Shown here in pieces: positions 6,048-62,053 of a stretch of DNA of 64,000 nucleotides; position 1 is the first letter of the stretch; every line of letters starts with the position of its first letter. The translations under genes were made by a program, and so were the position numbers. The stretch is taken from positions 124,001 through 188,000 of IMG/VR virus record IMGVR_UViG_3300031857_000010. One strand, written 5' to 3'. A model generated the notes under the pieces. That model worked only from the letters and a program-made list of their open reading frames with translations. It did no database searches and was not told the origin of the DNA.

Positions 6048-7193
6048 TTATTTAATTAAGTATACGATTGATTTTCTATTCTCTGCATCTGTAGGCATTA
6101 TTGCATCATTTTCATCGTGAAGCTTGATATCAATTAATTCTTTGGGTACTCCAATATTTATTAAATATTCCATGATTTGATTGGAACGTCTCTCAACAAT
6201 AATTCTATTGTTTTCTGGGCTTCCTATTGTGTCTGTAAAAGATTCAATTACTAATCTTGTATTTTTTCTATTTATGGCTTCTAAAGATATATTTTGTAAT
6301 TTGTAATGATATAGAATGGGTAATTTATGTTTATTGAAATCATAATAGATTGTAACTTTTGCATTAGAGAATGTAATTGAATCCATTTTAATGGAATCAT
6401 TCATTAAATTAGAGATTGTATTTTGTGATTCTAATTTAGTAGAATCTGTAGTTGGAATTTTTTGCACGATTACGACAGTATCAACTCTATTTGGAATTCT
6501 TGAAGGAGTTGGTCTGGGATCATGCCATTCAAGCTCTCTATGAAAACTCTTTCCAATTGAATAACTAATACCAATTGAAAATCTAGAGTAATTATCATAG
6601 TTAGTCAAACTATTTTCATAACCATCTAATTTATCTCCATTAACACTATTGTAAGAGTATTCTAAATTAGCAGTAAAATCAGGAGCGATATGATATTTTA
6701 TACCTACTCCAACTGGAATTACTTGATAATTACCTTTGAAGGATGTGTTTAATTCTGGTCGCAATGAATTTTGTGATTGAGATGTGTAATTAAGCACACC
6801 ATATCCTAAATACCCATAAAGTTGAAAGTTTTTTAATTCATCAAAATATCTTACATTGCCAGTTTGAGCAATAAGTAAAATTGAGGGTTGATAGTTTATT
6901 TTACTTTCATAACTCCACTTTCCATCATCTCCAGATAGTTTGGAATTATACAAGTCAAATGCTACTACAAAATTGTTTGAAATAAATTTATTTAATCTTA
7001 ATCCATATCCTAAATTCATGGATGTTTTAGAATAAAATGGAGTATTTTTTGCAATATCTCCGTTCCCAATATTGGAATTAATGTTTCCTTGAACAGACCA
7101 AGTTTTAAAATCTTTTAAGGTGAGCTTTCTTGTTTGAGCAATACCTGCTAAACAAAATAAAGTTAGAGCAAGTGTAATAATAGTTTTTTTCAT
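6048..7193 (-). CDS. OmpA-family outer membrane protein (N-terminal beta-barrel, C-terminal OmpA-like domain)
   Basis: Signal peptide; alternating aromatic beta strands and DKLDG motif; C-terminal IYYDFNK...FTDTIGSPENNRIIVERRS. Confidence 0.8.
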   Translation of the reverse strand: MKKTIITLALTLFCLAGIAQTRKLTLKDFKTWSVQGNINSNIGNGDIAKNTPFYSKTSMNLGYGLRLNKFISNNFVVAFDLYNSKLSGDDGKWSYESKINYQPSILLIAQTGNVRYFDELKNFQLYGYLGYGVLNYTSQSQNSLRPELNTSFKGNYQVIPVGVGIKYHIAPDFTANLEYSYNSVNGDKLDGYENSLTNYDNYSRFSIGISYSIGKSFHRELEWHDPRPTPSRIPNRVDTVVIVQKIPTTDSTKLESQNTISNLMNDSIKMDSITFSNAKVTIYYDFNKHKLPILYHYKLQNISLEAINRKNTRLVIESFTDTIGSPENNRIIVERRSNQIMEYLINIGVPKELIDIKLHDENDAIMPTDAENRKSIVYLIK

Positions 7194-8642: not shown

Positions 8643-9641
8643 TTATACTGTTAAGGGACTTTTACTAAACTCTATTTTAATTCCTTCACCTTCTAATTCA
8701 GAAATTAAATACATACAGAAATCTTCTGAAGAGGCAAATTTTTTCAAACTACCTTTGTAATTTAGTTTAAAGATACCTATTTCCTCTAATATATCTAATT
8801 TGTTTATTATTAAATGATTTACTCCATTAATTTTCATCCCCATTTTAACAACATCAAGATCCATCCAATTTATTTGTCTTGGTCTTCCGGTTGTTGCACC
8901 ATATTCATTGCCCAATTCTCTAATATTTTCAAATATTTCTTCATCACCTTCAAAGTTTTTGCTTCCAACATATGTTGCATAAACTTTAGCAATTCCTATT
9001 GTGTTGCGTATGTATTTAGGTGGAACTCCATTTAATATTGCACCTCCAACAGTACAATGAGAACTAGTTACATAAGGATAATCCCCCCAATCAATATCTA
9101 ATTCAAAACCTTGAGCTCCTTCAAAAAGAATTTTTACTTCCTTATCTCCGTAAAATTCTTTATAAGTATCAATCACAAATTCTTGAAGTTCGGGGATATC
9201 TCCAGCCCTTGTTCCTTTGCGAGAATACTTATCACGATATGCAGGACCATTTCCTTTTTTGGTGGTTCCTATTTTATTTTCAGATAATTCTTCAAACAAA
9301 TGTTCATCAGTAATTACATGTGTCCTTTTGTCAATACGAAGATATTTTCTTACTTCCAATCCTTTTGATTCTATTTCTTGAATTTCTTTAAATAGGTCTT
9401 TGACATTTACTACACATCCAACCCCTATAACACTTTTTAAACCATATGCAAATCCAATAGGAATATAATGTGTTACAATTTTTTGGCCTTTATGGTAAAC
9501 TGTATGTCCAGCATTTCCTCCTCCGTTATATCTAACAACGTGAGTGTATTCATCTTCTTTTGAAGCAAGAAAATGTGCAACTTTTCCTTTACCAGTATCA
9601 CCAGCTTGAAGGTCTACAATAATATCTGCGTATTTTATCAT
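8643..9641 (-). CDS. purA: adenylosuccinate synthetase (short form)
   Basis: GDTGKGK, RYNGGGNAGHT, GTTKKGNGPAY.DK, FEGAQG, YPYVTSS, GATTGRPR, NKLD. Confidence 0.92.
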   Translation of the reverse strand: MIKYADIIVDLQAGDTGKGKVAHFLASKEDEYTHVVRYNGGGNAGHTVYHKGQKIVTHYIPIGFAYGLKSVIGVGCVVNVKDLFKEIQEIESKGLEVRKYLRIDKRTHVITDEHLFEELSENKIGTTKKGNGPAYRDKYSRKGTRAGDIPELQEFVIDTYKEFYGDKEVKILFEGAQGFELDIDWGDYPYVTSSHCTVGGAILNGVPPKYIRNTIGIAKVYATYVGSKNFEGDEEIFENIRELGNEYGATTGRPRQINWMDLDVVKMGMKINGVNHLIINKLDILEEIGIFKLNYKGSLKKFASSEDFCMYLISELEGEGIKIEFSKSPLTV

Positions 9642-9647
9642 ATTTTT

Positions 9648-10346
9648 TTAATTATATTCTTCGTAAAATTCATCTATATCTAGAAGAATGTGTTTAGTAT
9701 CGTTTATGTATTCGGTATTAGGAAAATGAAAATGACCATACAAATGTAATTTTATTTTGTTTCCATTTTCATTTAATTGTTTCCACATGAGATCAACAAA
9801 ATTTCGCTCCTTATCTAACTCTTCAATCAACGTATCATCTTTCATAGCATATGAATAAACTAAGCCATTGAAAAAAGTTGGTTTGTTGAAGCTCATGCAT
9901 GTATGAGTTACAAGAACATCTATTTCATTTATGTTTTTTAATTTTTCTTCATCATAAATAAAAATTTCATCTTTCCAATAACTTATTCCTTCTTGTCTGA
10001 GTTTCCTATCAATGCTTACGGCACCACCAACAAATAAGTGATTATAACCATTTAGATTCATGGTGGTATAATCCGGTAAGAATTTAATATTATCATAATC
10101 GTGATTACCATCAAAATAATCTGGATTATCATGATTGCCTCTTATGACTAATATTGTATGATTTTTCTTTTTTAATTTTTTACTTATGTTTTTTAATTCA
10201 TGGTGTTCGTAGTTAGGTTTAAATCCAATTCCAAAATCACCAACTTGAATTATGTTACAATTTTCACGATCTTTATTGTGATGCATCCAACCAATCAATT
10301 GATTGAAATTGCCATGTATGTCCCCTAAGTAAATTGTATCTTTCAT
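9648..10346 (-). CDS. calcineurin-like metallophosphoesterase
   Basis: GDIHG, GDFG, RGNHD, THT, GHFH motifs. Confidence 0.9.
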   Translation of the reverse strand: MKDTIYLGDIHGNFNQLIGWMHHNKDRENCNIIQVGDFGIGFKPNYEHHELKNISKKLKKKNHTILVIRGNHDNPDYFDGNHDYDNIKFLPDYTTMNLNGYNHLFVGGAVSIDRKLRQEGISYWKDEIFIYDEEKLKNINEIDVLVTHTCMSFNKPTFFNGLVYSYAMKDDTLIEELDKERNFVDLMWKQLNENGNKIKLHLYGHFHFPNTEYINDTKHILLDIDEFYEEYN

Positions 10347-10375: not shown

Positions 10376-10942
10376 TTATAATATCTCGTCAATTACGGAT
10401 AATTTAAGAGCTTCCTCGGCAGTCATAAACCAGTCAATTTTCTTTTCATAAACTTCTTTCAATCTTTCTTTAGATATTTTTGTTTTTTCTAAAGTAATTT
10501 TTTCAATTAATTTCTGTAATCTTTTTGTTTCTTGGACATCCTCTTCAATACTTTTAATTGTACCCATGGTAATGCTACTGGCTTGATGATAAAGAGGTGT
10601 AGAATATTTATAAGCAAATCTTTTATGTCCGGAAATCAAAATTATAAAACCACAAGACATTGCAGCACCCATACAAATTGTGTGAATTGGAATCTCTGAT
10701 TTCTCCATTACAGAAATTAAACTCATACATTGGTAAATACTTCCACCATAAGAATCTATGTATAATTTAATTGGTTGTGGATCGTATTTAAAACCGAAAT
10801 ATTCAGCTTGTTTAACTAGAAATTGATCGTCCTCATTTATTTCTATAATTTTTTTTGTCAATGAAGAAACTGAAGATTGATCAACCTGTTCTGAAAAAAA
10901 TAAATTTCTATCCTTGGGCAATCTTAAAACGCTATTTTCCAT
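10376..10942 (-). CDS. clpP: ClpP-like serine protease
   Basis: LYIDSYGGS, GAAMSCG (catalytic Ser), YHQ (His), DWFMTAEEALKLSVIDEI. Confidence 0.88.
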   Translation of the reverse strand: MENSVLRLPKDRNLFFSEQVDQSSVSSLTKKIIEINEDDQFLVKQAEYFGFKYDPQPIKLYIDSYGGSIYQCMSLISVMEKSEIPIHTICMGAAMSCGFIILISGHKRFAYKYSTPLYHQASSITMGTIKSIEEDVQETKRLQKLIEKITLEKTKISKERLKEVYEKKIDWFMTAEEALKLSVIDEIL

Positions 10943-19610: not shown

Positions 19611-19973
19611 CTAAATTCCTTTATTACGTAATAATAATTTTTTTATTAATTCATCTTGCTCCTCTTGATCTATTTCGTCTTGGGATTTGACAAGATTATT
19701 TGCAATTTTGTTTTTATCACTATTTTCTTTCATGAATACTGATATTTTTTGATCGGAAATAATATCCCTAAAGTCTTTGACTTTTAAAATGGGACCTTCA
19801 TTCATCTCATCATATTCACTACCATCAGTTGCAACAATTATATCGACATCAAGATTGATGTGATTTTTCAAATCAACAACAACTCTTTTTTTAATGTGAT
19901 CTACTCTAGAAATGATTACTTCACCATCTTTTTTTTTCAAAAAGAAGAAATCATCAGGTTCTAATTTTGACAT
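19611..19973 (-). CDS. hypothetical protein
   Basis: 120 aa ORF. Confidence 0.55.
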   Translation of the reverse strand: MSKLEPDDFFFLKKKDGEVIISRVDHIKKRVVVDLKNHINLDVDIIVATDGSEYDEMNEGPILKVKDFRDIISDQKISVFMKENSDKNKIANNLVKSQDEIDQEEQDELIKKLLLRNKGI

Positions 19974-19995
19974 ATTCTTATTTTTTATTTTAAAT

Positions 19996-20220
19996 AAACC
20001 GAACTCACAGCACTAATCTTAAGTTCAGAAGGTCATCTAGATATTCCACATTAGTATATTACAATTGGTAGAAATTTTACGACATTGTAGTTTCGTGTTT
20101 TATGCTCGGACTTATACACGTTATCAACCATTAAAGAAGCAGGTCTATCGTAAACTCTTACTCAAAGGATGGACTTCTCCGGAGCCTAATCCCCAGTGGG
20201 TTTAACCATGAGCCGGTTTT
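19996..20220 (-). ncRNA. structured ~225 nt ncRNA, 6S-RNA-like candidate
   Basis: ORF-free, GC-richer island; ends pair (AACCGGCUCAUGG / CUGUGAGUUCGGUU, G-U pairs only on the minus strand); internal helices AGAAG/CUUCU, CAUC/GAUG, UUUACGAUA/UGUCGUAAA, UUCUAC/GUGGAA; promoter directly upstream. Confidence 0.65.
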
Positions 20221-20225
20221 GAATA

Positions 20226-20255
20226 CAAAAATAACTTAAATAATTTAAAATCAAA
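20226..20255 (-). promoter_or_regulatory. Bacteroidota sigma-A-type promoter for the ncRNA
   Basis: TTTG (20252-20255) - 18 nt - TATTTTTG (20226-20233, matches TAnnTTTG), ending 5 nt before the terminal stem. Confidence 0.65.
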
Positions 20256-22716
20256 ATTTATACCTTAAGTTAACTGAAAAATCTTGACCCAACCTATAGT
20301 AGTTTGAAACAACATAACCAGAATCAGAATTTTGAATAAATTCATATTTTGCATTTAATAAATTATTGATTCTCAATGAAATAGAGTACTTATTTTTTTC
20401 AATATTATAGATTAAATTTAAAAAGTTTTGTGGTATTTGATAAATATCACCGAGTCCAAAAACACCTACTGCGTTAAGTTTTTTACCTATGAAATTATAA
20501 GTTATTCCAATGTTGTTGTTTTCATTAATTGAATAAAATAAATCAGCATTAGATAGTATTGGCGAAGATCCTTGCAATGGTCTTTTTAAATTACTTACAA
20601 CAACTGTAGAATTACCTTCATTAGAAATAATTATTTGAGACCATAAGACGGATAAATTATAGTCTATTATAAACTTATTAATTCTCTTTTTTATTTCAAT
20701 TTCTCCACCAAAAACATTTGATCTTTCACTATTTTGAAAAGTTTCCAATCTACCACTTGCGGTAGCGATATTAACTCTTTCTATTGGATTATCTATTGTT
20801 TTACTAAATAAAGCTATTGAATAAATTTGGTTATTAGATGGATAAAACTCATAACCTAAATCAAAATTAATGACTTTAGAAACTGTAAGATTTGGATTGC
20901 CTTGAATTTTAGAACCTGCAAAAACTTCAGTATATATAAAAGGAACAGTTTCTCTAAATCTTGGTCTTATATTAGTGATTGAAGCGACAAACTTTAATTG
21001 TTTTTTGTCATTTATTCTATATTTTATTGATAAGAATGGAAGTAAATCTAAATTATCTATTTTATTATTTTTCAAAAATACTGGTGAAAGTTGATCTCTG
21101 TAATTTACTACTTGTTCTACATCTTCAACTCTTAATCCATAACTTAAATCAGTTTTATTACTGTTAAAATTAGATTTAATAAAAAAACCATTAATATTTG
21201 TGTATCCTTCTGTTTTTGAAGCTGGATTATTAACCCATAATTCTGTAGTTTGATCACTATTAAGATATTGATTTGGATTGGAAGGATCAATGTATCCATA
21301 AATTGAATTTATTTTTCCTAAATCATAATATTTTTGTTTATAATCAAATAAATTTCTAGAACTTAAATAACTGTATCCAAAATAGTGATCTAATTTTTTT
21401 CCTTTATGAGAAATTGTAAAATTAAAATTTATCGTGTTTTCTCTGTTTGTGTTCCAGAAAATGTGATTGTCGAGTTTATCTATGTTATTAAATGAATATT
21501 GACCATCATATAGGTAAACAAACTGTTCTCTTGCACTTTCTCCACTTTCCACTAAAGAAAATCCTCCTATACCATCTATTGTCCAATTTCCTAATCTATA
21601 ATTTGCATTTATTTGATCGGTAAATAAAGAATGTGAAAATGGTGTGTTTCTGGTTGTAAAAATATCTTTACTATAATCAAAATGAGTTCCAAATGTTTCT
21701 CTGTAAAGTGTGTTTTTTTGATTTATATATAATGAGGTATTTTTTATACTAAAATTTTTTGATTCATGGTGTAAAACAAAAATACCAGAGGGAGTAAATT
21801 GGTTTATCCTGTCTTTAAATTTATAGTCGAGAACATAATTTCCTTGTTTATTTATTAATCTTAGTATTCCATCTAAATTTTGATTATCATTTATTAAGTT
21901 TAAATTGAGATAGTAGCTTAATTTTTTGTTTTCTTTTCCTATCTGAAAATTAAAATTGTAATTAGGGGTGGGTGTCAATGAGTTTAAAGAACCCCTTAAA
22001 GAAACACTTTTTATTGTTTTTATTTCACTAGTTAAAATATCAATTTGAGCACCACAAACATTTCCCCATTGATCTGAAGAATATGTTTTCCTAATCTTCA
22101 TATTATCCATAATTCCAACAGGTAAAATATTTAAATCAATATTCTTTTTATCTGCATTGTTGGATGGAATTGGAATTCCATTAAGGGTTACTTGATTATA
22201 TCTATCGTCAAGACCCCTAATATTTAATTTAGAATTTGTAAATGATATGCCCGACACCTTTTTTAACCCATCTTCTGCATTTGAAATCCCTTTTCTGGTC
22301 ATTTCTGAAGATCCTATTGAAGACTCAATGCCATTAGCATTTTTTTTATCCATTAAAAGTATAGTTTCTGAAGAATTATTCTTTTTAGCTGATATCTCAA
22401 CTTCATTCATAGAAACAGATTTCGATTTTAATATAATATTAAATTGATTGTTGTTTGCATTTATTTTCTGTTCTTCAAACCCAAGACAATAAAAAACAAT
22501 CAAAGATTCATTTGATTTTATTTTCAAATAAAAATTACCATCGAAATCTGTTTGAGTTCCGTTTTGAGTATTTTCTTCAATTATAGAAACAAAAGGTAGT
22601 GGTTGATTTGATTCATCCACTACCTTTCCTTTTATTTCTTGACTAAATGCTTGAGTAAAACTTACAAATAAGTAAATTAATATGATTATTGCTCTCATTC
22701 TATTTCGTCCAACCAT
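20251..22716 (-). CDS. TonB-dependent outer membrane receptor (likely start 22698)
   Basis: Signal peptide, carboxypeptidase-regulatory-like N-domain (GKVVDES..PLPFVSI..GTQTDFDGNF), plug (IRGLDDRYN...NG), barrel, terminal RYKF. Confidence 0.92.
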   Translation of the reverse strand: MVGRNRMRAIIILIYLFVSFTQAFSQEIKGKVVDESNQPLPFVSIIEENTQNGTQTDFDGNFYLKIKSNESLIVFYCLGFEEQKINANNNQFNIILKSKSVSMNEVEISAKKNNSSETILLMDKKNANGIESSIGSSEMTRKGISNAEDGLKKVSGISFTNSKLNIRGLDDRYNQVTLNGIPIPSNNADKKNIDLNILPVGIMDNMKIRKTYSSDQWGNVCGAQIDILTSEIKTIKSVSLRGSLNSLTPTPNYNFNFQIGKENKKLSYYLNLNLINDNQNLDGILRLINKQGNYVLDYKFKDRINQFTPSGIFVLHHESKNFSIKNTSLYINQKNTLYRETFGTHFDYSKDIFTTRNTPFSHSLFTDQINANYRLGNWTIDGIGGFSLVESGESAREQFVYLYDGQYSFNNIDKLDNHIFWNTNRENTINFNFTISHKGKKLDHYFGYSYLSSRNLFDYKQKYYDLGKINSIYGYIDPSNPNQYLNSDQTTELWVNNPASKTEGYTNINGFFIKSNFNSNKTDLSYGLRVEDVEQVVNYRDQLSPVFLKNNKIDNLDLLPFLSIKYRINDKKQLKFVASITNIRPRFRETVPFIYTEVFAGSKIQGNPNLTVSKVINFDLGYEFYPSNNQIYSIALFSKTIDNPIERVNIATASGRLETFQNSERSNVFGGEIEIKKRINKFIIDYNLSVLWSQIIISNEGNSTVVVSNLKRPLQGSSPILSNADLFYSINENNNIGITYNFIGKKLNAVGVFGLGDIYQIPQNFLNLIYNIEKNKYSISLRINNLLNAKYEFIQNSDSGYVVSNYYRLGQDFSVNLRYKF

Positions 22717-23851
22717 TCATCCAAGCATTACCTGATCCAACATTTGAATCTTGAATGAACCAAGAATCGTTTAAAGTGGCTGTTAAACCAGCAAAAGAAT
22801 TACAATCTTTAAAATCAGTACCATTTCCTGATATGATAGAATTTGCAACAAATAATTCACCAGTTGTAATGTGATTAAGGGTTGTTTGCTCGCTAACTCT
22901 TACTCCATATTTAGCAAAACCAGTAACATTTGCATAAAATATTTTACCCTTTGTTCCTTCTCTTAGTCTAATTCCTTCATTTAATCCATCTCCATCATTA
23001 ACACCATTTAATGTTATATTTGATAATGTTGGTTCTGAATAAGGAGAAGCTGTATTATCATCTCCATTATTATCCGCTTCAATACCTCTATCACCACCAT
23101 CTATACCTTGTTGCACAAACCAATATTGACCTTTTCCTCTCCATCCATGAGTCCAATCAAAAGAATCATCTTGATTCTCCGTTGAAACTGCATATCTTAT
23201 ATTTAATGTTCCTCCAAACAATTCGATTCCATCATCAGAACCCCTATATGCCTGTATGTATTCAACAATTGTACTTGATCCAACCCCATTAAAAGAAAAT
23301 CCATTTAATTCATTATCTGTTCCAAGTATTTTACCAGCATATTCGACTCTTATATATTTTAAAATTCCGGAATTGTCTTGATCGTTACTTCCTCCATAAA
23401 CACCTGTACCCCCTTCGCCTTCTGCAGTTAGACCAGTGTTTATGTCAGCATATCCATTGACAATTATTCCTCCCCAATCACCATAGGTAGGATTGCTTTT
23501 TAATGGTGTGAAAATTATAGGATTAGTACTAGAACCTTCTGCGAAAATTTTTGCACCTTGTTTTATTGATAAAAAGGTTGTTACAGATGGATCAGCGTAT
23601 ATTGTTTGTCCACCATTTATATAAAGTGAATAACCCTCTTCAATAAATACACCACCAGAAAGAAGCCATTTTTTAGACGAATCCAAAGTAAAATTTTCAT
23701 TTATGACACCCTCTATTTTTTGAAATAAATCTCCATTTATATTTACTTCTGTAACTATAAATGATTTATTTTCTGGAATTTGATTATCGTCTTTTTTGCA
23801 AGACGTAACAAGTACAGCGAATGCTGTAATAATAAATAATAGTTTTTTCAT
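22700..23851 (-). CDS. Bacteroidota lipoprotein with beta-helix-like repeats, partner of the TBDR
   Basis: Lipobox VTSC; GDWGGIIVNG, DNSGILKYIRVEYAG, ELNGFSFNGVGS, DDGIELFGGT, DDSFDWT.GW, RGIEADN. Confidence 0.8.
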   Translation of the reverse strand: MKKLLFIITAFAVLVTSCKKDDNQIPENKSFIVTEVNINGDLFQKIEGVINENFTLDSSKKWLLSGGVFIEEGYSLYINGGQTIYADPSVTTFLSIKQGAKIFAEGSSTNPIIFTPLKSNPTYGDWGGIIVNGYADINTGLTAEGEGGTGVYGGSNDQDNSGILKYIRVEYAGKILGTDNELNGFSFNGVGSSTIVEYIQAYRGSDDGIELFGGTLNIRYAVSTENQDDSFDWTHGWRGKGQYWFVQQGIDGGDRGIEADNNGDDNTASPYSEPTLSNITLNGVNDGDGLNEGIRLREGTKGKIFYANVTGFAKYGVRVSEQTTLNHITTGELFVANSIISGNGTDFKDCNSFAGLTATLNDSWFIQDSNVGSGNAWMNGWTK

Positions 23852-23900
23852 CTTATTGTTTTTGCCAATAATTAGAAGTCAAAAAAGACAAAAACAAAAA

Positions 23901-23938
23901 TTAACTATTTGTTACTAAAAAGTTAACAAAAACATAAT
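23901..23938 (-). promoter_or_regulatory. 11-bp phased direct repeats (OmpR/PhoB-type box candidate)
   Basis: Plus strand TTAAC at 23901, TTACT at 23912, TTAAC at 23923, ATAAT at 23934, upstream of the lipoprotein-TBDR pair. Confidence 0.4.
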
Positions 23939-23969
23939 AACTTAAATTTAAAGCTATTTTAAATAAAAA

Positions 23970-24114
23970 TGGGATCGGGACGGGATTCGAACCCGCATAC
24001 CAACACTTGTTATGATACTGGAATTTTCATCTTCCGTTGGGGGGGAATCCCGATACAAGTATAAGGGACCCCATTGCCGACGATGAGAGCCTACCAATTC
24101 AGCCACACCGATCC
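23970..24114 (-). ncRNA. tRNA-like RNA with greatly enlarged anticodon arm and long variable arm
   Basis: GGATCGG/CCGATCC ends, D-like GCTGAATTGGTAGGC, T-arm GCGGG-TTCGAAT-CCCGT; about 145 nt, no 7-nt anticodon loop. Confidence 0.7.
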
Positions 24115-24679
24115 TTAATAATAAATATATAATATTTTAACGAAATATCAACCAACAAAATCAGTACGATAAACAATAAATCTTTCTATGTATTTATTGC
24201 CATCATCAGTTGTTATCTCATAATTATATGAGCCCAAAAGTTCTTCTGATTGTTCTAGTGTATTTGGTTGAAAACCTATGAATTCGACTAATTCATCTTC
24301 TTCGTACAAACCAGTCAAATCGTCTAACATACTTTTTAGTGTTTCTAGATCAGTTGAAGATGCCACTGGTTTATGTTCCAATTCACTAACTGCTATATTT
24401 ATTGAGCTGTAAATCATTTTTTTAATTTGACAATTCTTTTATATGATTTAGATAATTTTCTTTTATGAATTTTCCAAGATAACAAATTGCCACGTATGCA
24501 ACTGGTCCAATAATAAGCCAGATCCCAAATACTTTCCATAGCCAAATCCCAAGACCAATTGCAGCAATGATCATTGAACCAACAAATATGTTGTTGAGAT
24601 TCGTGATTGTTGATTTGAATTCTTCTTTGTTGAGGTTGTATTTCATGTTTTGTTTTTTTTCTGGATTTATCATTTTTTT

Positions 24680-25492
24680 TTATTTTATGGACTTCATGAG
24701 AGTTACCGGAACCTGATTACCATAAAGAGCAGTTTTTCCATCCCACTTATCAATGAACTGTTTTGTTAGAATTTGCTCAGTGAGTCCTTCAGAAATAATT
24801 TTATTGTATTCAGTTTGTAGACGTGCCAATTCATTCTTTTTCTTTTGCTCGATTATTTGTTGATCAAGAACAGAAACGTTTGTGTTGACTTCATTTCTTG
24901 TATCAATTTTCTGTTTTACTTTGTCTGAGAAATCTAGGTTTGCACTAAATGTAAGAAGCTCAAGTCCTTTTTCTTCGAATGCTTTCCTTACGAGTTGCTC
25001 TATTGTCTTCTCAAATTTAAGTGAACCACCAGATGCCATGAGAGTATCAGTAATATATTTTCTTGATTCTTCTTTGATCAAATCATAAATGTGAGGTTCA
25101 AGAACATTGTCTTCCAATGCAGTCATGAAATTATCAGCATTTCCCAAACGAGCATTTTGAAATACAAGATCTACAACACGGTTTTCGATTGCTTTATAAG
25201 AATAAAGTGGCTTTGCTGTGAACTCAGTGTTATCTGCAGCCTTGAGGTGTAAAACTTGTTCACCAAAATTTGCTCTTTGTTCATACAACGGAACTTGAAA
25301 CAATTCTGTTCCCGGACCCATTGTGTTTACTCTACCTTGAACACGAGAATAATCGGATTTACCGTCTTTTCCATAATTTTCCATCAATACTCCAGCAAAA
25401 TTAGGTGCAACCCTTTCACATGAAGTCATTGTGGTCATTGTTGTAATAATTGCAAGTGCTGCAATCAAATACGATAATTTGTTTTTTTTCAT
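24680..25492 (-). CDS. SPFH/band-7 (prohibitin-like) lipoprotein
   Basis: Lipobox MTSC; ERVAPNFAGVLMENYGK, ELFQVPLYEQR, coiled-coil C-terminus, FIDKWDG. Confidence 0.8.
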   Translation of the reverse strand: MKKNKLSYLIAALAIITTMTTMTSCERVAPNFAGVLMENYGKDGKSDYSRVQGRVNTMGPGTELFQVPLYEQRANFGEQVLHLKAADNTEFTAKPLYSYKAIENRVVDLVFQNARLGNADNFMTALEDNVLEPHIYDLIKEESRKYITDTLMASGGSLKFEKTIEQLVRKAFEEKGLELLTFSANLDFSDKVKQKIDTRNEVNTNVSVLDQQIIEQKKKNELARLQTEYNKIISEGLTEQILTKQFIDKWDGKTALYGNQVPVTLMKSIK

Positions 25493-26605: not shown

Positions 26606-27343
26606 TTATTTTTTAGTTTTTATATAATTATCATCATTAATGATTCTACAAATATGAGATTGATGGACATTGAAAATTTTTGCAATTTCTGATTTTGATA
26701 AACCTGAATTATGTAATTCTTTTATTTTATCATAATCTGAAATCTCTAATTTTACATATAATTTTTGGCTTTTACTGAGATTAATATCCTTTCCTATTGA
26801 ACTATAAGTTTTACCTATATTAATGTTGTTGATTATTTTTCTTGATACACCATATAAATCACCAATTTGTTTTTGAGTTAATTCGTTTTCAATTAATAAA
26901 TTTTTTATTTCTACAACTTCTTTTATGGTCAATTTTTTTAATTTTGATTCATAAAAATTGTGTTTTTTTCCTATATTTTTAATTTTATTGCTTTCTCCAA
27001 TTTTTCTTTTTGTTTCCTCTGACATATAAATATAGTGTTCACCTGATTTTGGCAATCTACAATTTAATCCCTTTTTTTTGTCTAAAACTTCAAATAAAAT
27101 GCCATAATATAGTTCTCTTTCAAGTAAAATTTTTACATCACACTCTTCAATGATTTCAAATTTATGTTCTTCAAATCCATATTTTTTTAATGAGTTGAAT
27201 AATTTGGATTGGTTTTCGCATTTTAAATTTTTATATTTACAAAAACGATTTTCGATGTCATTTGAAGAACCAATGTAGATTTTACCATTAGGTGAAGTTA
27301 TTTTGTATATGCCAATCATACATATAAATATGTAGATTTTCAT
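26606..27343 (-). CDS. GIY-YIG homing endonuclease with NUMOD/HTH C-terminus
   Basis: MIGIYKITSPNGKIYIGSS...R...LERE; MSEETKRKIG (NUMOD3-like); two HTH repeats. Confidence 0.9.
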   Translation of the reverse strand: MKIYIFICMIGIYKITSPNGKIYIGSSNDIENRFCKYKNLKCENQSKLFNSLKKYGFEEHKFEIIEECDVKILLERELYYGILFEVLDKKKGLNCRLPKSGEHYIYMSEETKRKIGESNKIKNIGKKHNFYESKLKKLTIKEVVEIKNLLIENELTQKQIGDLYGVSRKIINNINIGKTYSSIGKDINLSKSQKLYVKLEISDYDKIKELHNSGLSKSEIAKIFNVHQSHICRIINDDNYIKTKK

Positions 27344-29810: not shown

Positions 29811-29892
29811 TGAGCCGATGGAGGGACTCGAACCCCCGGTGTTTGTGTTCCAGTTTACAAAACTGGTGCTGTCGCCACTGAGCCACATCGGC
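29811..29892 (-). tRNA. tRNA-Thr(UGU)
   Basis: GCCGATG/CATCGGC; CCAGT-TTTGTAA-ACTGG. Confidence 0.9.
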
Positions 29893-29900
29893 AATAATAA

Positions 29901-29974
29901 GTTCATCCAGAGGAAGTCGAATTCCCATCTTCTGGTTCGTAGCCAGATATTCTCTCCGTTAAACTACAGGTGAA
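29901..29974 (-). tRNA. tRNA-Arg(ACG)
   Basis: TCTGG-CTACGAA-CCAGA; imperfect acceptor stem. Confidence 0.8.
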
Positions 29975-29979
29975 TTTTT

Positions 29980-30054
29980 GTACCCCCAGTGGAAGTCGAA
30001 TCCACAAACACCAGATCCTAAGTCTAGCCGCTTTGCCAGTTTGCGTACAGGGGC
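29980..30054 (-). tRNA. tRNA-Leu(UAG), short variable region
   Basis: GCCCCTG/TGGGGGT; CTAGA-CTTAGGA-TCTGG. Confidence 0.85.
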
Positions 30055-30060
30055 ATTTTA

Positions 30061-30134
30061 TGGAGGTAGGAGATGGGATCAAACCATCGTAGAAGGTTTT
30101 GCAGACCTCCACCTAGTCACTCGGTCATCCTACC
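30061..30134 (-). tRNA. tRNA-Cys(GCA)
   Basis: GGTAGGA/TCCTACC TCCA; GAGGT-CTGCAAA-ACCTT. Confidence 0.9.
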
Positions 30135-30143
30135 TTACATTAT

Positions 30144-30223
30144 TGTTGGGATGGAGGGGATCGAACCCACATGTCACCAATTACTCTTTCAACACGTTAT
30201 CAGCGTGAGGAGATACAACCCAA
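30144..30223 (-). ncRNA. non-canonical tRNA-like RNA, GAU (Ile) loop, D-loop motif 3' of the anticodon arm
   Basis: CACG-CTGATAA-CGTG, GAAAGAGTAATTGGTGACAT, T-arm GTGGG-TTCGATC-CCCTC; same architecture as 29043..29120. Confidence 0.7.
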
Positions 30224-30281
30224 TAAAGAAATATTTTGCGTAAAGTATCAGAAATTAATACTTTCTGCAAAAAATTTATTT

Positions 30282-30356
30282 TGATGTCCCAGCTGGAATC
30301 GAACCAACATCATCAGAGTCAAATTCTGATATAATTAACCGTTATACTATAGGACA
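30282..30356 (-). tRNA. tRNA-Gln(UUG)
   Basis: TGTCCTA/TGGGACA; TCAGA-ATTTGAC-TCTGA. Confidence 0.85.
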
Positions 30357-30368
30357 ATATAATATTAG

Positions 30369-30441
30369 AGTGGGATAGGAAGTAATCGAAACTTCGCACC
30401 TATGATTTACAGTCATTGTGAACTCCCCGGTCTCTATCCCA
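30369..30441 (-). tRNA. atypical tRNA-Tyr(GUA)
   Basis: GGGATAG/CTATCCC; ATGA-CTGTAAA-TCAT; aberrant D region, no long variable arm. Confidence 0.6.
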
Positions 30442-30448
30442 GATATTT

Positions 30449-30524
30449 GTACTCCCGACGGGACTCGAACCCGCAATGACCACCTTGAAAGGGTGGTGAC
30501 TTAAACCAATTTGTCCACAGGAGC
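30449..30524 (-). tRNA. tRNA-Glu(UUC)
   Basis: CCACC-CTTTCAA-GGTGG; canonical T-arm. Confidence 0.92.
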
Positions 30525-30529
30525 ATTAA

Positions 30530-30611
30530 GAGCGAGTAGAGAGAATCGAACTCTCATCTCTGGTTTGGAAGACCAGCATAATTTACTTTCGTTCCACTAT
30601 ACGATACTCGC
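30530..30611 (-). tRNA. tRNA-Gly(UCC), enlarged D-loop
   Basis: GCGAGTA/TACTCGC; CTGGT-CTTCCAA-ACCAG. Confidence 0.85.
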
Positions 30612-30661
30612 AATTGTGCCAACATGTCAAAGAACAACAACAGATACTCATGTTGTTTTAT

Positions 30662-30738
30662 TGTTGCGGGAATGGGAATCGAACCCATGTGATTCAGCTT
30701 ATGAGACTGAGCTGGAACCATCTCCAGTCCATCCCGCA
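30662..30738 (-). tRNA. tRNA-Met(CAU), initiator-like acceptor
   Basis: TGCGGGA/TCCCGCA; TCAGT-CTCATAA-GCTGA. Confidence 0.85.
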
Positions 30739-30745
30739 ATTTTTA

Positions 30746-30820
30746 GGAGGAGCTACCGAGCTTTGAACTCGGGACTTAACATTGCAAATGTTATGTGTTC
30801 GCCATCTATACCATAGCCCC
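30746..30820 (-). tRNA. tRNA-Ala(UGC)
   Basis: GGGGCTA/TAGCTCC with G3-U70; TAACA-TTTGCAA-TGTTA. Confidence 0.9.
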
Positions 30821-30822
30821 AT

Positions 30823-30900
30823 TGTCTGGTAAGCCGGACTCGAACCGACATCAGCTCCTACTTCCAAGGTAGGCGAGGCAACCAATTCCTCCATTACCAG
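30823..30900 (-). tRNA. tRNA-Pro(UGG)
   Basis: CCTAC-CTTGGAA-GTAGG. Confidence 0.88.
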
Positions 30901-30903
30901 TTT

Positions 30904-30978
30904 AGCGGTCTATGAGAGAATCGAACTCTCACCACCCGATAGACAGTCGGGTATCCTTAGCCGTTGGACCAATAGACC
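30904..30978 (-). tRNA. tRNA-Asp(GUC)
   Basis: GGTCTAT/ATAGACC G; CCCGA-CTGTCTA-TCGGG. Confidence 0.92.
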
Positions 30979-30988
30979 TTTTTTACTT

Positions 30989-31065
30989 TGTGTACCCGGA
31001 GAGATTCGAACTCTCGACTCCTGCATTAAAAGTGCAGTACTCTAATCCAGCTGAGTTACGGATAC
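30989..31065 (-). tRNA. tRNA-Lys(UUU)
   Basis: CTGCA-CTTTTAA-TGCAG. Confidence 0.92.
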
Positions 31066-31094
31066 ATTTTGAATGCACCCGTAGGCACATTCAG

Positions 31095-31133
31095 TTATTT
31101 ACGTTTTCGTTTTAATTTATTTTTTGTTTTCAT
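31095..31133 (-). CDS. 12-codon Lys/Arg-rich mini-ORF (MKTKNKLKRKRK) inside the tRNA array
   Basis: Read manually; six AAA codons; lies between two hairpins directly upstream of tRNA-Lys(UUU). Confidence 0.35.
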   Translation of the reverse strand: MKTKNKLKRKRK

Positions 31134-31203
31134 TTCATTTCCAGTTTTCTGGGGACTGAGCCCAGCAGGTATTTGACTCAGCCCCCAACATCATCATTTT
31201 TTT

Positions 31204-31278
31204 TGCGGGGAATGTGGGCAACGATCCCACACCCTTCTGCTTAACAGGCAGTTGCTCTTCCACTTGAGCTTCTTCCCC
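31204..31278 (-). tRNA. tRNA-Asn(GUU)
   Basis: CTGC-CTGTTAA-GCAG; non-standard T-loop ATCGTTG. Confidence 0.85.
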
Positions 31279-31282
31279 CCTT

Positions 31283-31357
31283 TGTGGAACCGGAGGCTTT
31301 CGAGTCCTCGACCTTTGGATTTTCAGTCCAACGCTCTTCCATCTGAGCTACGGTTCC
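31283..31357 (-). tRNA. tRNA-Phe(GAA), first gene of the array
   Basis: GGAACCG/CGGTTCC; TTGGA-CTGAAAA-TCCAA. Confidence 0.9.
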
Positions 31358-57653: not shown

Positions 57654-57763
57654 TGTAGTCAGGACAGGATTCGAACCTGTATGATATCCGCAGATATCTT
57701 TCACTTGCGTTCACTACCTCATCAGGTTTCCGTGATTAGCGTCTACCATTCCGCCACCTGACC
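57654..57763 (-). ncRNA. tRNA-like RNA A (Leu-type D-arm, no canonical anticodon arm)
   Basis: GGTCAGG-TG-GCGGAATGGTAGACGC ... GATATC-TGCG-GATATC ... ACAGG-TTCGAAT-CCTGT-CCTGACT-ACA. Confidence 0.75.
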
Positions 57764-61950: not shown

Positions 61951-62053
61951 TGTAGTCAGGACAGGATTCGAACCTGTACGCCTTTCATCCTGAATACCGC
62001 GACAATACGCTGAAAGACCTCGGATAGTGCGTCTACCATTCCGCCACCTGACT
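61951..62053 (-). ncRNA. tRNA-like RNA B (same ends as A, unrelated centre)
   Basis: AGTCAGG-TG-GCGGAATGGTAGACGC ... CTTTCA/TGAAAG helix ... ACAGG-TTCGAAT-CCTGT-CCTGACT-ACA. Confidence 0.75.

What the first reader, a model, noticed from the sequence alone, without database searches (positions are those of the whole stretch)
20251..23938. TBDR plus lipoprotein uptake module with 11-bp phased repeats: candidate host Pho-regulated auxiliary operon
Seen: an intact lipoprotein-TBDR pair, with TTAAC/TTACT/TTAAC/ATAAT repeated exactly every 11 bp about 50-90 nt upstream. Known: PhoB/OmpR regulators bind 11-bp tandem repeats, and cyanophage pstS genes carry host Pho boxes. From recollection, this lipoprotein/TBDR type is linked to phosphate stress in Bacteroidota. 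Inference: a Bacteroidota-phage analogue of host-controlled phosphate scavenging.
Basis: partly seen in the sequence, partly recalled or inferred. Interest (0 to 1): 0.6.

Follow-up and report, generated by a model that had tools for sequence, protein, structure and literature searches.

The report
Phage-borne phosphate-stress outer-membrane uptake pair
A 217-kb phage of Bacteroidota carries its host's phosphate-starvation outer-membrane transporter and cap lipoprotein, together with the 11-bp-phased TTAAC repeat found before the bacterial copies, so the phage probably lets the host's phosphate sensor switch the genes on.

Summary
An intact lipoprotein gene (22700-23851, minus strand) and a TonB-dependent receptor gene (20251-22716, minus strand) lie in an IMG/VR phage record of 216,699 bp. 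GTTAAC / AGTAAC / GTTAAT sit exactly 11 bp apart, 49-76 nt before the start codon.

- **Homology:** the pair matches the Fjoh_0545/0546, BT4055/4056 and ElpS module. The published Flavobacterium copy lies beside phoBR and is induced about 250- to 1000-fold on phosphate depletion.
- **Bacterial context:** in four of five genomes checked, the neighbouring regulator is that genome's best PhoB match.
- **Shared repeat:** Bacteroidota copies carry TTAAC-like units at 11-bp spacing upstream (40 observed, 3.6 expected).
- **Site in the phage:** a matrix built only from bacterial units puts its best hit in the whole phage genome at this site, in the right orientation.
- **Conservation:** every close phage relative keeps both the pair and an array.
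- **Regulator:** the phage record has no OmpR-type regulator of its own.

PhoB binding, phosphate-dependent induction and the transported substrate remain unproven. TTAAC arrays also precede other regulator-linked receptor genes in Flavobacterium, so PhoB specificity is inferred. I class this as a new variant of the cyanophage pstS/Pho-box theme.

The parts
23896..23928 (-). Three-unit direct-repeat array with an 11-bp period: GTTAAC (23927-23922), AGTAAC (23916-23911), GTTAAT (23905-23900). Candidate operator for a host OmpR/PhoB-family regulator.
   Evidence: Sequence read. Top hit of a bacterial-derived matrix over the whole phage genome. Arrays at -77 to -120 in all close phage relatives. 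Same motif and spacing before bacterial orthologs.
23933..23938 (-).
   Evidence: In register by 11 bp but a poor match to the unit consensus.
23866..23898 (-). Possible Bacteroidota-type core promoter: TTTG (23898-23895) abutting the last repeat, a 20-nt spacer, then TAATTATTG (23874-23866). This is inference only.
   Evidence: Read and compared with the TTTG / TAnnTTTG consensus (my own knowledge). The bacterial orthologs show (T)AnnTTTG-like boxes 25-35 nt before their ATG. The phage's own promoter class, GTAACTT-N14/15-CGTTTAAAT, is absent here.
22700..23851 (-). Surface lipoprotein, 383 aa, right-handed beta-helix (Pfam PF28492 Beta_helix_4). Member of the FII / BT4056 / ElpS family and presumed cap of the receptor.
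   Evidence: precomputed Pfam. AlphaFold2 model with pLDDT 92.4, all beta-helix. Only generic beta-helix matches in PDB. 42 columns invariant across phyla are kept. Tree.
20251..22716 (-). TonB-dependent receptor, 821 aa: signal peptide, CarbopepD_reg_2, Plug and barrel. Start overlaps the lipoprotein stop, with an alternative ATG at 22698.
   Evidence: Homologs adjacent to the lipoprotein homolog in most loci. Barrel part folded at pLDDT 84 in the complex run. The only Plug-domain gene in the record.
23966..24110 (-). tRNA-like element that bounds the promoter region upstream (context only, not part of the module).
   Evidence: One search shows tRNA-like 5' and 3' halves. Not called by ARAGORN with or without introns, nor by Rfam. 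No fold signal.

Best explanation
This is a phage-carried copy of a two-gene outer-membrane uptake module that bacteria switch on when starved of phosphate. It consists of a TonB-dependent transporter and a surface-exposed beta-helix lipoprotein thought to sit on the transporter's outer face.

An ancestor of this clade of large aquatic Bacteroidota phages captured the genes from a Flavobacteriales- or Chitinophagales-like host. The clade has kept them since, together with the host-type operator: three TTAAC-like half-sites spaced one helical turn (11 bp) apart just upstream of the core promoter.

The phage has no regulator of this type. The likely mechanism is that in a phosphate-starved infected cell the host's phosphorylated PhoB, or a close paralog, binds the array and drives transcription of lipoprotein then receptor. 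The host's lipoprotein-export, Bam and TonB machinery install and power the products. The extra uptake capacity then supplies phosphorus for replicating a genome of more than 200 kb.

Shown: homology, pairing, synteny in phages, conservation and unique placement of the array, and absence of a phage OmpR-type regulator.

Inferred: PhoB binding, phosphate-dependent induction, the substrate, and the benefit to the phage.
For: - **Viral record and synteny:** the record is viral (216,699 bp, CheckV 83%). The pair is syntenic in related contigs up to 302 kb and also occurs in the 635-kb LR745206.
- **Bacterial pairing:** bacterial homologs sit beside a TBDR homolog. An OmpR-family regulator lies within 4.5 kb in 33 of 79 loci, most of them Flavobacteriales. 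The best models are PhoB and PhoR, and the regulator is the genome's best PhoB match in 4 of 5 genomes. Each of 3 genomes has a single homolog, the one linked to phoBR.
- **Literature:** Fjoh_0545/0546 (PMC8115612); BT4055/4056 as transporter plus lid, adjacent in 621 genera (10.1101/2023.03.17.533168); ElpS (PMC2996285).
- **Array in bacteria:** spacing-11 count is 40 against 3.6 expected. TTAAC and GTAAC variants lead all 1024 pentamers for 11-bp phasing.
- **Array in the phage:** the matrix's top hit in the phage genome is this site. All close phage relatives have arrays although the spacers differ.
- **Independent Pho links:** arrays also lie before a PhoX gene (score 15.4), a PhoD-like gene, and in the Tenacibaculum phoB-phosphoesterase intergenic region (12.7). 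The expectation is 0.005 per window.
- **No phage regulator or phage promoter here:** no Trans_reg_C protein in the phage. The phage's own promoter motif is absent at this site.
- **Origin:** the phage clade is monophyletic (SH-aLRT 96) and nested in Bacteroidota.
- **Complex test:** score 0.60 with best control 0.00, rated weak support. The runs agree in at least 83% of contacts and partner pLDDT is at least 88. That mark was reached by 51 of 78 solved complexes and 2 of 108 mismatched pairs, but scores of 0.60 or under by only 5 of those 78 and by all 4 mismatches that passed.
Against: - No experiment or expression data exist for the phage genes.
- No Bacteroidota Pho box has been described in the papers I could search, so the TTAAC consensus is my inference.
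- In F. subsaxonicum, perfect TTAAC x3 arrays precede other CarbopepD_reg/Plug genes that sit beside other kinase/regulator pairs. The pattern is four times commoner than its reversed control (85 against 20), so the array type is not exclusive to PhoB.
- pstS loci and most phosphatase loci showed no strong array.
- Bacteroidales homologs lack TTAAC arrays.
- The regulators score below the curated PhoB cut-offs.
- Gene order in the phage (lipoprotein then receptor) is the reverse of its nearest bacterial relatives.
- No terminator separates the operon from upstream phage genes, so read-through transcription is possible.
- The substrate is unknown even in bacteria.
Confidence: 0.55

Rival explanations
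1. The array is real and binds a host OmpR-family regulator, but not PhoB. The signal would then be something other than phosphate, for example an envelope or other nutrient cue sensed by one of the paralogous two-component systems that sit beside similar receptors.
For: Perfect TTAAC x3 arrays lie before other CarbopepD_reg/Plug/OMP_b-brl_3 genes flanked by other HisKA/HATPase_c kinases and regulators in F. subsaxonicum. pstS loci lack arrays.
Against: The phage proteins' only homolog in three genomes is the phoBR-linked one. The phage units (GTTAAC-AGTAAC-GTTAAT) resemble the phoB-linked Flavobacterium array (GTTAAC-AGTAAT-AGTAAA), not the TTAACC type of the paralogs. The orthologous operon is phosphate-induced in Flavobacterium and Caulobacter.
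Confidence: 0.15
2. The module serves the phage as envelope armour rather than as a nutrient gate. It would replace or cap an abundant host receptor that phages use for entry, giving superinfection exclusion or protecting progeny, as small lipoproteins of T5 and phi80 do for FhuA (my own knowledge).
For: - Other phage lineages carry stand-alone lipoproteins of the same family without a receptor.
- The receptor diverges faster than the lipoprotein among phage relatives (51-53% against 68-73% identity).
- The phage also encodes an OmpA-like protein and a Band_7 lipoprotein.
Against: A full transporter with Plug and barrel is kept intact. The host-type nutrient-responsive operator is conserved. 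42 residues invariant across phyla are kept in the lipoprotein. The known exclusion lipoproteins are small and unrelated.
Confidence: 0.12
3. The repeat is a relic or a chance feature of AT-rich DNA. The genes would then be transcribed only by read-through or from phage promoters, at times set by the phage.
For: Loose TTAAC triples are no commoner in the phage genome than in simulated sequence (7 against about 14). No terminator lies upstream. Unit-to-unit self-similarity is low.
Against: The site ranks first of 433,334 positions with an independently built matrix. Arrays recur at the same place in every close relative although the spacers have diverged. The phage promoter motif is absent here.
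Confidence: 0.1
4. The genes are bacterial DNA wrongly joined to, or binned with, a viral contig.
For: Some short 'Bacteriophage sp.' records with homologs look bacterial. Some phage-like contigs sit in bacterial bins, for example L010 labelled Prochlorococcus.
Against: - The pair lies mid-contig, with phage promoters, a tRNA array and PHROG-matching genes on both sides.
- The same insertion occurs in many independent assemblies up to 302 kb.
- Gene order differs from bacteria, and GC matches the phage.
Confidence: 0.02

Closest known systems
Flavobacterium johnsoniae PUSIV cluster: Fjoh_0543/0544 (PhoR/PhoB), Fjoh_0545 (TBDT), Fjoh_0546 (lipoprotein FII) (Lidbury et al., PMC8115612)
   Same: Same two protein families side by side. 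Flavobacterium homologs (L040, L045, L061) are 36-43% identical to the phage lipoprotein and have kinase and regulator divergently upstream. The TTAAC-type 11-bp array lies in the same place, and part of the unit series is nearly identical.
   Different: Gene order is reversed in the phage. There is no phoBR, OprP or other cluster genes. The phage lipoprotein lacks the N-terminal extension of its nearest bacterial relatives (383 aa against 410-450 aa). It sits in a viral genome.
Bacteroides thetaiotaomicron BT4055/BT4056, a non-SusC transporter with a putative non-SusD lid (Price et al., 10.1101/2023.03.17.533168)
   Same: Same family (pectin-lyase-fold lipoprotein beside a TBDT). A predicted contact on the outer face fits the weak support found here: 0.60 against a best control of 0.00.
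   Different: Bacteroidales homologs are about 35-47% identical, show no TTAAC array and have no adjacent PhoB-like regulator in most loci.
Caulobacter crescentus ElpS (CC0170) and TBDR CC0171 (Le Blastier et al., PMC2996285)
   Same: Lipoprotein then receptor, the same order as in the phage. Made under phosphate starvation and surface-anchored. Alphaproteobacterial homologs here also sit beside type II secretion genes.
   Different: The proteobacterial lipoproteins are much longer (586-964 aa). They form the other main branch of the tree. Their upstream repeats are of the CTGTCA type.
Cyanophage pstS / phoA with host Pho boxes, induced through the host PhoBR system (Sullivan 2010; Zeng and Chisholm 2012; my own knowledge)
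   Same: The same logic: a host-derived phosphorus-acquisition gene on a phage, preceded by a host-type phased repeat and with no phage regulator. The cyanobacterial unit PyTTAAPyPy(T/A) (my own knowledge) even resembles the TTAAC unit.
   Different: A different host phylum. The genes are an outer-membrane TonB-dependent transporter plus a lipoprotein, not a periplasmic binding protein or phosphatase. No experimental support yet.
SusC/SusD glycan uptake pairs
   Same: General architecture of a TBDT with an N-terminal CarboxypepD_reg domain plus a surface lipoprotein partner.
   Different: The SusC model TIGR04056 matches only residues 27-162 (75 bits against a cut-off of 368). The lipoprotein is a beta-helix, not the alpha-helical SusD fold. 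Not a member.

Membership tests
Pho-regulon TBDT + FII/BT4056/ElpS-family lipoprotein module | Beta-helix (pectin-lyase-fold) lipoprotein homologous to the family | tested here: met
   PF28492 Beta_helix_4 is precomputed for P0001 and all hits. Identity is 35-60% to bacterial members that lie beside phoBR. The model is a beta-helix with pLDDT 92. I had no Fjoh_0546 sequence, so that link runs through Flavobacterium loci with the published architecture.
Pho-regulon TBDT + FII/BT4056/ElpS-family lipoprotein module | Adjacent, co-oriented TonB-dependent transporter of the matching family | tested here: met
   CarbopepD_reg_2 and Plug domains. The TBDR homolog is adjacent in most bacterial and all close phage loci.
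Pho-regulon TBDT + FII/BT4056/ElpS-family lipoprotein module | Lipobox cysteine and surface-export signal | tested here: met
   LVTS-C18 followed by KKDDNQ. C18 is invariant in 38 sequences. The match to the export signal is judged by eye against the published K-(D/E)2 type (my own knowledge).
Pho-regulon TBDT + FII/BT4056/ElpS-family lipoprotein module | Lipoprotein binds the outer face of its transporter | tested here: inconclusive
   Complex score 0.60 with best control 0.00, rated 'weak support'. Runs agree in at least 83% of contacts and partner pLDDT is at least 88. No interface was given.
Pho-regulon TBDT + FII/BT4056/ElpS-family lipoprotein module | Induced by phosphate starvation | not testable with these tools
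   Shown for Fjoh_0545/0546 and ElpS in the literature.
Pho box (PhoB operator) | Two or more direct repeats with an 11-bp period on one face of the helix | tested here: met
   Three units at exactly 11 bp, plus a weak fourth.
Pho box (PhoB operator) | Match to the consensus used by the host group | tested here: inconclusive
   Best site in the genome for a matrix built from phoBR-linked Bacteroidota operons. That consensus is inferred here, is not published, and is shared with arrays beside other two-component systems. Only 3 of roughly 30 other Pho-type loci show strong or clear arrays.
Pho box (PhoB operator) | Placed at or overlapping the upstream promoter element | tested here: inconclusive
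   The last unit abuts a TTTG, 20 nt before a TAATTATTG box. No mapped transcription start.
Pho box (PhoB operator) | Bound by phosphorylated PhoB | not testable with these tools
   Needs EMSA or footprinting.
Phage auxiliary metabolic gene under host control (cyanophage pstS type) | Host-derived metabolic gene inside a genuine phage genome and retained across a phage lineage | tested here: met
   Neither protein has a PHROG family.
Phage auxiliary metabolic gene under host control (cyanophage pstS type) | No phage-encoded cognate regulator | tested here: met
   No Trans_reg_C match in the 217-kb record. The record is about 83% complete, so this is not absolute.
SusC/SusD | Full-length SusC/RagA signature and a SusD-fold partner | tested here: not met
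   TIGR04056 scores 75 bits against a cut-off of 368 and covers the N-terminal part only. The partner is a beta-helix.
Phage tailspike / depolymerase beta-helix | Virion-attachment domain, trimeric beta-helix, no lipoprotein signal | tested here: not met
   Only generic fold matches (TM 0.2-0.4). Lipobox present. Orthologs are bacterial operon genes.

The most novel reading that the evidence does not exclude
A widespread clade of large aquatic Bacteroidota phages has carried, over a long period, a complete TonB-dependent phosphorus-scavenging gate (transporter plus cap) wired to the host's PhoB through a TTAAC-N6 phased operator. This would be the first outer-membrane active-transport system shown to work as a host-regulated phage auxiliary gene. 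The phage copy would also point to the still undescribed Pho box of Flavobacteriia and Chitinophagia.
Probability: 0.45. Interest if true: 0.75.

Novelty: new variant of a known kind. Interest (0 to 1): 0.62.

Why it matters
Phages that borrow the host's phosphate alarm to time their own phosphorus-acquisition genes are known only from cyanophages (pstS, phoA). This would extend the principle to Bacteroidota, which are major degraders of organic matter in water and soil. It would also extend it to a different kind of machine: an energised outer-membrane transporter with its surface cap.

The substrate of this very common bacterial module (adjacent in 621 genera according to Price et al.) is unknown. 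Its retention by phages with genomes of 200-300 kb argues that it delivers usable phosphorus quickly.

The analysis also yields a concrete, testable candidate for the Bacteroidota PhoB operator: (G/A)(T)TAAC every 11 bp. A compact 113-bp promoter is available for testing it.

Tried and rejected
- **pstS loci:** five Bacteroidota genomes, no array above score 8.6 near true pstS genes. This neither helps nor refutes, since promoters may lie outside the 1.5-kb flanks.
- **Other Pho-type loci (PhoX, PhoD, EndA, Metallophos_2):** only L189, L195 and L212 show arrays.
- **Canonical TGTCA spacing in proteobacterial loci:** weak signal, 3 at 11 bp and 5 at 22 bp against 0.6 expected. Clear only in L046.
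- **Sigma-70 promoter and terminator scan:** uninformative (36 found against 32.5 expected; no terminators).
- **Rfam on 19800-24300:** only sub-threshold chance hits.
- **ARAGORN with introns and folding of the tRNA-like element and the 277-nt spacer:** no call, z-scores near 0. No homologs in other loci.
- **PHROGs:** no family for either protein.
- **Foldseek against PDB:** generic beta-helix matches only.
- **Second-best matrix hit (genome 119723):** lies inside a 661-aa ORF, so I took it as chance.
- **Literature:** no described Bacteroidota Pho box found.
- **Reads and large searches:** The large representative protein search was not needed.
- **Complex prediction:** returned only weak support and is used as such.

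Full report
**What is there.** The window is bases 124001-188000 of an IMG/VR virus record of 216,699 bp, with a CheckV completeness estimate of 83%. It has 25-32% GC and genes almost all on the minus strand. It also carries a 14-gene tRNA array and a recurrent phage promoter motif.

Two overlapping minus-strand genes fill the reported interval. The first encodes a 383-aa lipoprotein (22700-23851) and the second an 821-aa TonB-dependent receptor (20251-22716).
- The lipoprotein has the lipobox LVTS-C18 followed by KKDDNQ. It carries the precomputed Pfam family PF28492 (Beta_helix_4) and folds as a right-handed beta-helix at pLDDT 92.4. PDB gives only generic beta-helix matches.
- The receptor has a signal peptide, CarbopepD_reg_2, Plug and a barrel that ends in an aromatic residue. 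It is the only Plug-domain gene in the record.

On the coding strand they read GTTAAC, AGTAAC and GTTAAT at 11-bp steps, 49-76 nt before the ATG, with a weak fourth unit.

**Is it more than chance?** Not on its own. Loose TTAAC triples at 11-bp spacing occur 7 times in the genome, against about 14 in simulated genomes. The signal comes from comparison with bacteria.

I took the upstream regions of bacterial homolog operons. In 17 Bacteroidota loci, TTAAC-like sites lie exactly 11 bp apart 40 times (3.6 expected) and 22 bp apart 15 times (3.2 expected). Among all 1024 pentamers, the TTAAC/GTAAC variants lead for 11-bp phasing, and they do so in 14 of 14 non-redundant loci.

An 11-nt matrix built from 63 bacterial units, with no phage sequence, was scored as three phased units over both strands of the whole phage genome. 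Its best hit was window 23896-23928 on the minus strand (17.09). The next was 16.82 inside an ORF, and the third 11.4.

Every close phage relative (60-100% lipoprotein identity, lipoprotein-then-receptor order) has an array scoring 11-20 at -77 to -120. The cores are conserved and the spacers differ.

**What the genes are.** The lipoprotein has thousands of relatives. The nearest 120 clusters (67-85% identity) lie, where I looked, on phage-like contigs of up to 302 kb. There the pair sits in conserved synteny with a sigma factor, an amidase, DUF5661, Hc1, DnaJ and a D12 methyltransferase. The 635-kb phage LR745206 also has the pair.

Bacterial relatives (35-60% identity) occur in Flavobacteriales, Chitinophagales, Cytophagales, Bacteroidales, Proteobacteria, Latescibacterota and other groups. 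Nearly all sit next to a homolog of the receptor.
- **Flavobacteriales:** the layout is kinase and regulator on one strand, receptor and lipoprotein on the other. The regulator has Response_reg and Trans_reg_C, with PhoB as its best NCBIfam model. The kinase's best models are PnpS and PhoR, and all of these score below the curated cut-offs. The regulator is the genome's best PhoB match in 4 of 5 genomes. The lipoprotein has no other homolog in three genomes.
- **Gammaproteobacteria:** a PhoB that passes TIGR02154 follows the pair.
- **Alphaproteobacteria:** type II secretion genes follow the pair.
- **Tenacibaculum:** a Porin_O_P protein lies alongside.

This is the published architecture. F. 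johnsoniae has Fjoh_0543/0544 (PhoR/PhoB), Fjoh_0545 (TBDT) and Fjoh_0546 (lipoprotein FII). The last two are induced by log2 8.0 and 9.9 on phosphate depletion (PMC8115612). BT4055/BT4056 are described as a transporter with a putative lid, adjacent in 621 genera (bioRxiv 10.1101/2023.03.17.533168). Caulobacter ElpS, beside the TBDR CC0171, is made only under phosphate starvation (PMC2996285).

A maximum-likelihood tree places nine phage sequences in one clade (SH-aLRT 96), nested among Flavobacteriales and Chitinophagales. The LR745206 copy branches separately.

**How it probably works.** The phage record has no OmpR-type regulator. The operon also lacks the phage's own promoter class, GTAACTT-N14/15-CGTTTAAAT, of which at least 14 copies exist. 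The array ends at a TTTG that lies 20 nt before a TAATTATTG box, a plausible Bacteroidota -33/-7 promoter (my reading of the sequence).

I therefore infer that host PhoB~P, or a close paralog, activates the operon in phosphate-starved infected cells. Host machinery would then install and energise the products. This parallels cyanophage pstS/phoA (my own knowledge).

A complex prediction for lipoprotein plus barrel gave 0.60 against a best control of 0.00. The tool rates this as weak support. The runs agree in at least 83% of contacts and partner pLDDT is at least 88.

**What weakens it.** TTAAC x3 arrays are four times commoner than a reversed control in F. subsaxonicum (85 against 20). The perfect ones precede other CarbopepD_reg/Plug genes that sit beside other kinase/regulator pairs. 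The array type therefore belongs to a regulator subfamily, not provably to PhoB.

pstS loci lack arrays. Strong or clear arrays were found at only three of the other Pho-type loci examined:
- before a PhoX gene (15.4),
- before a PhoD-like gene,
- in the Tenacibaculum phoB-phosphoesterase intergenic region (12.7).

The background expectation is 0.005 per window. No published Bacteroidota Pho box was found. No expression data could be obtained. Read-through from upstream phage genes is not excluded.

**Rivals.** Four alternatives remain:
- control by a non-Pho paralog,
- a role in superinfection exclusion or receptor masking, suggested by stand-alone lipoproteins of this family in other phages and by faster divergence of the receptor,
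- a relic repeat with no function,
- bacterial contamination of the contig, which is very unlikely given independent assemblies and phage genes on both sides.

**Verdict.** It is a new variant of a known kind: host-controlled phosphorus auxiliary genes, here as an outer-membrane TonB-dependent gate in Bacteroidota phages. It also gives a testable candidate for the Pho box of this phylum.

Noticed in passing
window minus strand, GTAACTT starting at 2147, 16675, 28027, 34174, 47987, 49526 (and others outside the window): A phage promoter class, GTAACTT-N14/15-CGTTTAAAT, lies about 20-30 nt before start codons, with at least 14 copies in the 217-kb genome. The 8-mers TGTAACTT and CGTTTAAA are 20-24 times enriched upstream of genes. 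It is possibly read by a phage sigma factor, which relatives encode.
   Followed up: partly
23966-24110 (-): A tRNA-like element directly upstream of the array. It has a tRNA-Leu-like acceptor and D-arm at the 5' end and a T-arm and acceptor at the 3' end, with about 70 extra nucleotides between. ARAGORN (with introns) and Rfam do not call it. The relative L010 also has a tRNA-like 3' end in the same place.
   Followed up: partly
29812-31357 (-); 57655-57763 (-); 61952-62053 (-): An array of 14 tRNA genes. Two further long tRNA matches are modelled by ARAGORN with 20- and 24-nt introns.
   Followed up: no
8643-9641 (-), 9648-10346 (-), 10376-10942 (-): A short adenylosuccinate-synthase-like gene (phrog_1211). 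PurA models score 272 bits against a 402 cut-off, and the PurZ model 129 against 300. It lies next to a metallophosphoesterase and a ClpP-like protease. Whether it is a PurZ-type enzyme for a modified base is open.
   Followed up: partly
6048-7193 (-); 24680-25492 (-): Further envelope proteins encoded by the phage: an OmpA-like outer-membrane protein, and a Band_7/SPFH protein matching phrog_200 'lipoprotein'. The latter is similar to genes of Bacteroides phages and LoVEphage.
   Followed up: no
26606-27343 (-): A GIY-YIG nuclease with helix-turn-helix domains, which looks like a homing endonuclease.
   Followed up: no
19974-20250: A 277-nt gene-free spacer downstream of the receptor, richer in GC than its surroundings. 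It has no homolog in related loci, no Rfam match and no fold signal.
   Followed up: partly
loci L145-L184 (IMG/VR contigs up to 258 kb): Other phage lineages carry stand-alone lipoproteins of the same beta-helix family (29-35% identity). They have no adjacent receptor and no TTAAC array.
   Followed up: partly
L096, L098, L103 (F. subsaxonicum): Perfect TTAAC x3 arrays lie before other CarbopepD_reg/Plug/OMP_b-brl_3 genes, each divergent from its own histidine kinase and regulator. This looks like a family of paralogous sensor-receptor modules sharing one operator type.
   Followed up: partly
L006-L008, 20095 onward: Related 300-kb phage contigs carry a second, longer TonB-dependent receptor (917 aa, with the TonB_dep_Rec_b-barrel domain) about 6 kb downstream of the pair. 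This window's phage has only one.
   Followed up: no
genome 58481-59095 (-), outside the window: A phoH gene, common in phages, with no TTAAC array near it.
   Followed up: no
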